Source: Haliotis rufescens (lineage: Eukaryota). Taken from it: a stretch of DNA of 64,000 bases. This document shows, piece after piece, positions 17,702 to 18,072 of the stretch; the first letter of the stretch is position 1, and each line of letters starts with the position of its first letter. Under the pieces are notes generated by a model. It worked only from the letters and a program-made list of their open reading frames with translations. It was not told where the DNA came from and made no database searches. Made by a program: the position numbers and the translations under genes. The DNA is taken from assembly GCF_023055435.1 (NCBI RefSeq), contig NW_025963890.1:22754001-22818000 (forward strand), written 5' to 3'.

Positions 17702-17855
17702 GTGTCGTATGCTCGACCAAGCTGTGAAAGTATTAAAGGAGCAAACCTTTACATTAGTGGCTTGCCAAAATCTATGACTCAGTTGGACTTGGAGAAACTG
17801 TTTTCTTCTTGTGGAAGTATCATAACTTCAAGAATACTATATGACCAAAACACAG
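17702..17855 (+). CDS. elav: ELAV exon 4a (linker and first half of RRM2), mutually exclusive
   Basis: tttcAG acceptor; [51 protein letters not shown](G); GTactc donor; 154 nt, phase 0 to 1. Confidence 0.93.
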
Positions 17856-17918
17856 GTACTCTATTTGGATTTATTTGATTTTGTCAATTTATTTACTTTG
17901 TTCAACAATTATTTGTAG

Positions 17919-18072
17919 GTATCATATGCAAGACCGAGTAGTGAAAGTATAAAGGGTGCTAACTTGTATATATGTGGCTTGCCCAAGTCTATGACACAAC
18001 AGGATTTGGAGAAGTTGTTTTCACAGTGTGGAAAGATTATAACATCCAGAATTCTGTACGATAATACCACAG
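17919..18072 (+). CDS. elav: ELAV exon 4b (paralogous copy of 4a), mutually exclusive
   Basis: ttgtAG acceptor; [51 protein letters not shown](G); GTcaga donor; 154 nt, phase 0 to 1. Missed by the ORF track. Confidence 0.93.

What the first reader, a model, noticed from the sequence alone, without database searches (positions are those of the whole stretch)
17702..18072. Tandemly duplicated, obligately mutually exclusive RRM2 exons in an ELAV/Hu gene
Seen: two intact 154-nt paralogous exons, each with AG/GT sites and phase 0 to 1, separated by only 63 nt (17856-17918). They share 44 of 51 residues, yet many synonymous positions differ (GTG TCG vs GTA TCA; AAC CTT TAC ATT vs AAC TTG TAT ATA), indicating an old duplication with both copies under purifying selection. 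Because 154 is not a multiple of 3, including both or neither frameshifts the mRNA. Established: vertebrates diversify Hu proteins by gene paralogy and hinge splicing. Inference: this lineage makes two RNA-binding surfaces from one ELAV gene by exon swapping. I do not know of this being described for ELAV RRM2.
Basis: partly seen in the sequence, partly recalled or inferred. Interest (0 to 1): 0.92.

Follow-up and report, generated by a model that had tools for sequence, protein, structure and literature searches.

The report
Ancient swappable exon pair in abalone ELAV
The abalone ELAV (neuronal RNA-binding protein) gene carries two tandem copies of one 154-nt exon that can only be used one at a time; the pair is real, occurs in every mollusc class sampled and so probably predates living molluscs, and is already listed as isoforms in RefSeq, but I found no paper on it, and in the four RNA data sets I could check only the first copy was spliced in.

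Summary
Exons 4a (17702-17855) and 4b (17919-18072) are both 154 nt, AG/GT-flanked and phase 0 to 1. They share 44/51 residues and 112/153 nt and lie 63 nt apart.

- **Gene:** the window matches Haliotis rufescens/cracherodii RefSeq "ELAV-like protein 1" at 100%.
- **Encoded part:** RRM1 strand beta4, the inter-RRM linker, and RRM2 beta1-alpha1-beta2. It is not RRM2 alone.
- **Selection:** synonymous sites are saturated (pS 0.89) while pN is 0.096.
- **Frame:** using both exons or neither gives an early stop codon.
- **Annotation:** RefSeq lists 4a/4b isoform pairs in four Haliotis species. The same A/B swap is annotated in chiton, limpet, Pomacea, octopus and Dreissena.
- **Age:** all 21 A-type exons sampled form one clade (90/78), so the duplication probably predates crown Mollusca. 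B-type resembles the ancestral exon.
- **Expression:** in four RNA-like contig sets only 3>4a and 4a>5 junctions exist. Exon 4b sits at intron depth, so it is minor or restricted there.
- **Regulation lead:** a variation-free intronic block with three UGCAUG motifs lies downstream of 4b.
- **Literature:** seven searches found no paper describing it.

I class it as a new member of a known kind. The scan's other notes at this place are re-readings of the same stretch, not other DNA.

The parts
13981..14197 (+). ELAV coding exon with an ATG, encoding the N-terminus and RRM1 beta1-alpha1-beta2. It ends in phase 1. RefSeq isoforms add alternative upstream first exons.
   Evidence: 100% tblastn match to P0429/P0432. 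The loose ends read the exon's last bases joined to exon 3.
16298..16401 (+). Exon 3, encoding RRM1 beta3-alpha2. An alternative acceptor 12 nt upstream (16286) adds VSPS in some RefSeq isoforms.
   Evidence: One search shows the joint 16401>17702.
17475..17701 (+). Upstream part of the intronic block that shows no variation between abalone samples.
   Evidence: table 3: run X2 has 30 differences in 2849 intronic nt but none from 17475 to 18558. P about 7e-5, or about 2e-3 after correcting for choosing the largest gap.
17702..17855 (+). Exon 4a, the A-type (mollusc-specific) copy. It is the copy spliced in all informative RNA contig sets.
   Evidence: joints 16401>17702 and 17855>19559 in X1, X2 and X6; 51/51 to RefSeq isoforms X1, X3 and X6.
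17856..17918 (+). The 63-nt AT-rich intron between the two copies. If retained, it contains an in-frame stop.
17919..18072 (+). Exon 4b, the B-type (ancestral-like) copy. It is intact with AG/GT sites. It is covered only at intron depth in the four runs.
   Evidence: 51/51 to RefSeq isoforms X2, X4 and X7 of four Haliotis species, and 49/51 to the chiton B exon.
18073..18558 (+). Downstream part of the variation-free intronic block. It holds three + strand TGCATG motifs at 18099, 18267 and 18438.
   Evidence: 0.22 motifs expected in 486 nt; P about 0.0015, post hoc.
19559..19805 (+). Exon 5, encoding RRM2 beta3-alpha2-beta4 and the start of the hinge.
   Evidence: (joints 17855>19559 and 19805>20124).
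20124..20472 (+). Last coding exon, encoding the end of the hinge, RRM3 and the stop codon.

Best explanation
This is a genuine pair of mutually exclusive, tandemly duplicated exons in the canonical ELAV/Hu gene of an abalone. The duplication arose before the living mollusc classes diverged. The B copy keeps the ancestral sequence and the A copy is a mollusc-specific derivative marked by the motif TQLDLE. Each mRNA must carry exactly one copy, because two or none shift the frame into an early stop that should trigger nonsense-mediated decay. In abalone the 63-nt gap probably also blocks 4a-to-4b splicing sterically. The swap changes seven residues: one in the RRM1-RRM2 linker, one at the end of RRM2 beta1 (the RNP2 motif), two on helix alpha1, one in the alpha1-beta2 turn and two in the beta2-beta3 loop. 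Exon 4a is the default. Exon 4b is a minor or cell-type- or stage-restricted choice, possibly promoted by Rbfox-type factors binding the UGCAUG cluster just downstream. Shown here: the anatomy, the age, the selection, the frame logic and 4a usage. Inferred: 4b usage in abalone tissue, the steric block, Rbfox control and any difference in RNA or partner binding.
For: Anatomy and frame. Identity of the encoded part: HuD/HuR residues 76-126, E about 1e-22; fold model: beta4 136-139, linker, beta1 151-155, alpha1 163-173, beta2 176-183. Selection: (pS 0.89, pN 0.096). Exon 4b is identical in four Haliotis species and 49/51 identical to the chiton B exon. Isoform pairs differing only by the exon occur in Haliotis, Pomacea, Octopus, Liolophura, Patella and Dreissena. 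B-type exons sit in full-length transcript-sized contigs from run assemblies of other gastropods (P0383, P0446, P0455). The A-type exons form one clade, support 90/78, in 94% of bootstrap trees. All 78 proteins bearing TQLDLE that carry a name are molluscan. An oyster-like genomic ORF (P0005) and the Mya model (P0263) each carry both copies in tandem. 4a junctions appear at 15-250x contig depth in X1, X2 and X6.
Against: No 3>4b or 4b>5 junction appears in any of the four contig sets. Exon 4b lies inside an unbroken intron-level contig (17828-19585; depth 27.5 against about 250-290 for exons in X1). No short spliced 4b peptide of this species turned up in the protein collection. RefSeq isoforms can rest on cross-species protein alignments, so they do not prove expression. 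Contigs drop rare variants and the tissues are unknown, so absence is weak evidence. In an oyster-like species the gap is 236 nt, so steric blocking cannot be the general mechanism. The UGCAUG and block statistics are post hoc and rest on closely related samples.
Confidence: 0.75

Rival explanations
1. In abalone, exon 4b is a silent relic. Only 4a is ever used, and the 4b isoforms in RefSeq are products of homology-based prediction.
For:: no 4b junction in four RNA-like contig sets, and 4b sits at intron depth; no spliced 4b fragment found.
Against: A neutral exon would not keep 49/51 identity to the chiton B exon, an open frame and AG/GT sites. It would not stay identical in four Haliotis species while its synonymous sites against 4a are saturated. 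The flanking intron shows no variation between samples. B-type exons occur in transcript contigs of other gastropods.
Confidence: 0.07
2. The pair mainly serves as an unproductive-splicing switch. Including both exons, or retaining the 63-nt intron, yields an mRNA with an early stop that is degraded, which lets ELAV or another factor tune ELAV dosage rather than make a second protein.
For:: both-exon and retained-intron forms stop 7 codons after 4a, more than 370 nt upstream of the last junction; in X5 one contig (17521-18074) runs through 4a, the intron and 4b at higher depth than its surroundings. Autoregulation of ELAV/Hu genes is established knowledge.
Against: A poison-exon role would not need 4b to keep a near-perfect RRM-coding sequence for hundreds of millions of years. 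No 4a>4b joint was seen. Annotated isoforms are clean swaps.
Confidence: 0.1
3. The A and B copies arose several times independently, or are kept alike by gene conversion, so the pair is not ancient.
For: The exon is only 51 residues long, so the tree is weakly resolved. The B-type exons do not form a clade.
Against: A-type exons from chiton, gastropods, bivalves and cephalopods share TQLDLE and group together (90/78). Within abalone the two copies differ at nearly every synonymous site, which argues against conversion.
Confidence: 0.05

Closest known systems
Tandem duplicated exon substitutions (mutually exclusive homologous exons), as catalogued for human genes (PMC9741552, PMC8373072)
   Same: The exons are adjacent and homologous, of equal length and phase. 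One is used per mRNA. The origin is ancient, both copies are under purifying selection, and the isoforms differ only in a homologous segment.
   Different: The ELAV/Hu pair did not come up in my paper searches; I did not read these two catalogues to check. This pair is mollusc-wide, not vertebrate. Use of the second copy in this species is not yet shown by reads.
U2AF1 exons 3/Ab (PMC5224494, PMC6821156)
   Same: A duplicated exon pair inside an RNA-binding splicing-related protein gives two near-identical isoforms.
   Different: It is a different protein family and domain. The regulation of the U2AF1 pair has been tested experimentally, and this one has not.
OGDH exons 4a/4b and alpha-tropomyosin exons 2/3: exclusivity enforced by branch-point to 5' splice-site proximity (PMC7969005; the tropomyosin case is from my own knowledge)
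   Same: The intervening intron is very short (63 nt here). Any branch point for 4b would lie about 36-40 nt from the 4a donor.
   Different: No branch point has been mapped here. The gap is 236 nt in an oyster-like species (P0005), so frame incompatibility plus decay is the only shared safeguard.
Honey bee elavl2 alternative splicing (PMC8553928) and vertebrate Hu hinge microexons
   Same: A lineage with few ELAV paralogues diversifies ELAV by splicing. Bee variants also touch RRM2.
   Different: The bee events are insertions or skips of small exons in the RRM2 loop and the hinge. They are not a swap of homologous exons. That paper reports no mutually exclusive pair (0 occurrences of the term).

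Membership tests
ELAV/Hu RNA-binding proteins | Three RRMs, two in tandem, then a hinge, then RRM3 | tested here: met
   the model shows three beta-alpha-beta-beta-alpha-beta units with a disordered hinge at 230-300; precomputed Pfam RRM families on the matching RefSeq proteins.
ELAV/Hu RNA-binding proteins | Closest solved relatives are HuD, HuR and HuC rather than other RRM families | tested here: met
   HuD/HuR/HuC score E 1e-21 to 1e-23. Sex-lethal scores 1e-14 and PABP 1e-8 or weaker.
Mutually exclusive tandem-duplicated exon pair | Adjacent homologous exons of the same length and phase, each with its own AG and GT | tested here: met
Mutually exclusive tandem-duplicated exon pair | Mature mRNAs carry exactly one of the two | tested here: inconclusive
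   4a-only mRNA is shown by joints. 4b-only is known only from RefSeq isoforms of Haliotis and from transcript contigs of other gastropods. No 4a>4b joint was seen. The one protein with both copies (Mya P0263) looks like a prediction artefact.
Mutually exclusive tandem-duplicated exon pair | Both copies conserved across species | tested here: met
   A and B copies occur in Polyplacophora, Gastropoda, Bivalvia and Cephalopoda.
Mutually exclusive tandem-duplicated exon pair | A mechanism that forbids double inclusion or double skipping | tested here: met
   One search shows frame incompatibility with early stops. Steric hindrance by the 63-nt intron is inferred only. A search for competing RNA pairings gave nothing above background.
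Rbfox-regulated alternative exon | Conserved (U)GCAUG within a few hundred nt downstream of the exon, with Rbfox-dependent inclusion | tested here: inconclusive
   Three motifs lie 27-371 nt downstream of 4b inside the variation-free block. Dependence on Rbfox cannot be tested with these tools.

The most novel reading that the evidence does not exclude
Molluscs, cephalopods included, have kept a binary exon switch in their one canonical ELAV gene since before the living classes diverged. The mollusc-specific A exon has become the default and the ancestral B exon a regulated alternative. The two proteins differ in the RRM1-RRM2 linker (Cys versus the Ser aligned with the HuR S100 phosphosite), in RNP2 and on the exposed face of helix alpha1. 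As a result they differ in RNA targets, partners or localisation, which would be a splicing-based counterpart of vertebrate Hu gene paralogy.
Probability: 0.4. Interest if true: 0.65.

Novelty: new member of a known kind. Interest (0 to 1): 0.5.

Why it matters
ELAV/Hu proteins are central regulators of neuronal mRNA and are the standard pan-neuronal marker in mollusc and cephalopod neurobiology. They have also been implicated in Aplysia memory. If the two isoforms differ in function, then probes, antibodies and knock-downs that ignore the swap mix two proteins. The pair also offers a clean natural experiment on how small changes in the linker and RRM2 alter Hu protein behaviour. It adds one more case where splicing and gene duplication are alternative routes to the same diversity. 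For annotation, at least one public gene model (Mya arenaria) fuses both copies into one protein.

Tried and rejected
- **The look-up of encoding contigs:** Gap lengths in other species are inferred only from read-through ORF peptides.
- **Search with exon 4b alone:** the short-protein search found nothing above 83% identity, so no spliced 4b fragment of this species was found in that length range.
- **Profile search seeded with an arthropod-like ELAV:** relatives of the seed dominated the results. It yielded only the Mya model.
- **Cluster look-up of ten genomic fragments:** it gave no species names.
- **Inverted-repeat scan of introns 3-4:** it found 31 weak pairs, the best being 21 nt at 81%. 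None stood out, so I do not support a docking/selector structure from this evidence.
- **Seven literature searches:** none found a description of the pair.
- **Rejected reading:** 4b as a decaying pseudo-exon (see rival explanations).
- **Spliced models:** Exons were searched one at a time by reference, and full-length comparisons used database proteins. Exons were concatenated only inside one local script, to locate stop codons.

Full report
**Observation.**
- Exon 4a is 17702-17855 and exon 4b is 17919-18072. Each is 154 nt, preceded by AG and followed by GT, and they are separated by 63 nt.
- The peptides are identical at 44 of 51 positions. The codon table confirms the quoted synonymous differences.
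- 112 of 153 nt are identical. 29.5 of 33 synonymous sites differ (pS 0.89, saturated), against 11.5 of 120 nonsynonymous sites (pN 0.096).
- This is an old duplication held under strong purifying selection, not a chance resemblance.

**Gene and organism.** Open frames in the window, exon translations and tblastn of database proteins give this structure:

| Exon | Coordinates (+ strand) |
|---|---|
| 2 (with ATG) | 13981-14197 |
| 3 | 16298-16401 |
| 4a | 17702-17855 |
| 4b | 17919-18072 |
| 5 | 19559-19805 |
| last coding exon | 20124-20472 |

- The window matches RefSeq "ELAV-like protein 1" isoforms of Haliotis rufescens/cracherodii at 100%, and those of H. rubra/asinina slightly less well.
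- Both exon peptides align to residues 76-126 of the HuD and HuR RRM1-2 crystal constructs, with E about 1e-22.
- A fold model of isoform X1 (pLDDT about 90 in the RRMs) places exon residues 137-187 as follows: RRM1 beta4 (136-139), linker (140-150), RRM2 beta1 (151-155), alpha1 (163-173), beta2 (176-183) and the start of the beta2-beta3 loop.
- The seven variable positions fall in the linker (Cys/Ser, aligned with the second Ser of the HuR PSSE motif), the last residue of beta1 (Ser/Cys), alpha1 (Leu/Gln and Ser/Gln), the alpha1-beta2 turn (Ser/Lys) and the beta2-beta3 loop (Gln-Asn/Asn-Thr).
- "RRM2 exon" is therefore only partly accurate.

**Frame logic.**
- With both exons the frame stops 7 codons into 4b.
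- With the 63-nt intron retained it stops 7 codons into the intron.
- With neither exon it stops 5 codons into exon 5.
- All of these stops lie more than 200 nt upstream of the last exon junction, so by the usual rule such mRNAs should be degraded. That last step is inference.

**RNA evidence.** The sampled-word index found 14 transcriptome-sized contig sets and 6 genome-sized ones that hold the stretch. I laid four of the small sets on 16000-20600.
- Three sets (X1, X2, X6) show GT..AG joints 16401>17702, 17855>19559 and 19805>20124. Contig depths are 15-290, so these sets are RNA.
- No set shows 16401>17919, 18072>19559 or 17855>17919.
- Exon 4b lies inside one unbroken contig (17828-19585) at the same depth as the flanking intron. 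In X1 that is 27.5, against about 250-290 for exons.
- So 4a is the default exon in these samples, and 4b is absent or too rare for contigs to keep. Contigs show presence rather than absence, and the tissues are not known to me.
- One oddity: in X5 a contig (17521-18074) ends exactly two bases past the 4b donor, where a graph branch would fall. Coverage there is too thin to interpret it.

**Comparative evidence.** A library-wide HMMER search with exon 4b and a word-based search seeded with the Mya arenaria protein, followed by cluster look-ups, gave named mollusc ELAV proteins. Extracting the exon-4 segment shows the following.
- RefSeq lists isoform pairs that differ only by the exon in H. 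rufescens, H. cracherodii, H. rubra and H. asinina (for example X1/X2, X3/X4, X6/X7).
- The same pairs are listed in Pomacea canaliculata, Octopus bimaculoides, O. sinensis, O. vulgaris, the chiton Liolophura sinensis, Patella vulgata and Dreissena polymorpha.
- The Mya arenaria GenBank model P0263 contains both copies in series. An oyster-like genomic ORF (P0005) reads through from an A copy into a B copy 236 nt downstream.
- B-type exons occur in full-length proteins predicted from 1.8-2.5 kb contigs of run assemblies (P0383, P0446, P0455). Contigs of that size encoding the whole protein must be spliced mRNA, so B is used in other gastropods.
- The abalone B exon is 49/51 identical to the chiton B exon, and is identical in all four Haliotis species.

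**Age of the duplication.**
- A maximum-likelihood tree of 46 exon peptides puts all 21 A-type exons on one side of a branch (support 90/78; 94% of bootstrap trees). B-type exons and the non-mollusc outgroups are unresolved.
- Every A-type exon carries TQLDLE. Every named protein among the 78 with that motif is molluscan.
- B-type exons resemble annelid, flatworm and arthropod exons.
- The simplest reading is one duplication before crown Mollusca, with A the derived copy.
- Heterodont bivalve B exons (Mya, Dreissena) sit on long branches, which suggests relaxed or altered constraint there.

**Paralogues.** Six-frame searches of the whole genome find no other close copy of the exon or of RRM3. 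They do find two divergent, intronless three-RRM ORFs of 318 and 346 aa. So the genome holds one canonical ELAV plus two distant ELAV-like genes.

**Regulation and mechanism.**
- *Variation-free block:* in run X2, which differs from the window at 30 places in 2849 intronic nt, there is no difference between 17475 and 18558. That stretch covers 227 nt upstream of 4a, the inner intron and 486 nt downstream of 4b. The probability is about 7e-5, or about 2e-3 allowing for choosing the largest gap.
- *UGCAUG cluster:* the only + strand TGCATG motifs in introns 3-4 are three sites at 18099, 18267 and 18438, all inside that block. The expectation is 0.22 and P is about 0.0015, post hoc.
- *Interpretation:* motifs downstream of an exon favouring its inclusion is established Rbfox behaviour. 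Its application here is a hypothesis.
- *5' splice sites:* read-through ORF peptides from genomic fragments suggest each exon type keeps its own non-consensus donor. A-type exons are mostly followed by Gly-Thr codons and B-type by Gly-Gln.
- *Steric block:* the 63-nt intron would place any branch point for 4b about 36-40 nt from the 4a donor. This resembles the classic steric block in alpha-tropomyosin and the OGDH case (PMC7969005). No branch point is mapped here, and the 236-nt gap in the oyster-like species shows this cannot be the general safeguard.
- *RNA pairings:* an inverted-repeat scan gave only weak pairs.

**Novelty.**
- Seven full-text searches found no paper that describes this pair.
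- The bee elavl2 paper describes other kinds of ELAV splicing and never uses the term "mutually exclusive".
- The octopus elav paper treats the gene as a single marker.
- The isoforms are, however, already present in automated public annotation. The kind of event is well known (PMC9741552, PMC8373072, PMC5224494).
- I therefore class it as a new member of a known kind, of moderate interest. It is a very old, phylum-wide switch in a much-used neuronal regulator, and its second arm still needs read-level proof in abalone.

**Limits.**
- Only one reads call was allowed, and it used contigs.

Noticed in passing
window 16286-16297: A tandem alternative acceptor lies 12 nt upstream of exon 3 and adds VSPS in the RRM1 beta2-beta3 loop. 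RefSeq isoforms differ by it (for example P0432 has it, P0440 lacks it). The RNA contigs use the downstream site at 16298.
   Followed up: partly
L006 1498-2454 (-) and L007 1498-2538 (-): Two intronless, divergent three-RRM ELAV-like ORFs (318 and 346 aa) lie on other contigs of the same genome. They are 50-54% identical to the window's RRM3. They may be retrogene-derived non-neural ELAV-like paralogues.
   Followed up: partly
protein P0263 (Mya arenaria GenBank model), residues 124-234: This public gene model carries both the A and B exon copies in series, joined by 9 residues. This is most likely a prediction artefact. RefSeq isoform X1 of the same species has A only.
   Followed up: partly
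proteins P0396 and P0407 (Bradybaena similaris): Two 91%-identical ELAV genes on different large contigs are annotated, one with the A exon and one with the B exon. This may be a case of duplicated genes each favouring one copy. Whether each gene still holds both exons is unknown.
   Followed up: partly
window 17521-18074, run X5: One contig covers intron, 4a, the inner intron and 4b at higher depth than its surroundings. It ends exactly 2 nt past the 4b donor, where a splice-versus-intron branch in the assembly graph would fall. Coverage is too thin to decide.
   Followed up: no
window 17702-18072: Synonymous divergence between the copies (pS 0.89) exceeds the 0.75 expected at saturation by about 1.9 SD. 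This could be noise or pressure to keep the copies unlike at the DNA/RNA level.
   Followed up: no
proteins P0263 and P0401: B-type exons of heterodont bivalves evolve fast. Mya B is 36/51 identical to abalone B. Dreissena B has His in place of the Pro of the conserved GLP motif.
   Followed up: partly
window about 30565-32007: There is a run of near-identical short open frames (repeated 'MDITLEQNRWISHWNR...' units) on the + strand, which suggests a tandem minisatellite.
   Followed up: no
window 48001-54000: GC skew swings strongly, from +0.62 at 48-50 kb to -0.35 at 52-54 kb, with raised GC content. This may be a satellite or an inverted repeat.
   Followed up: no
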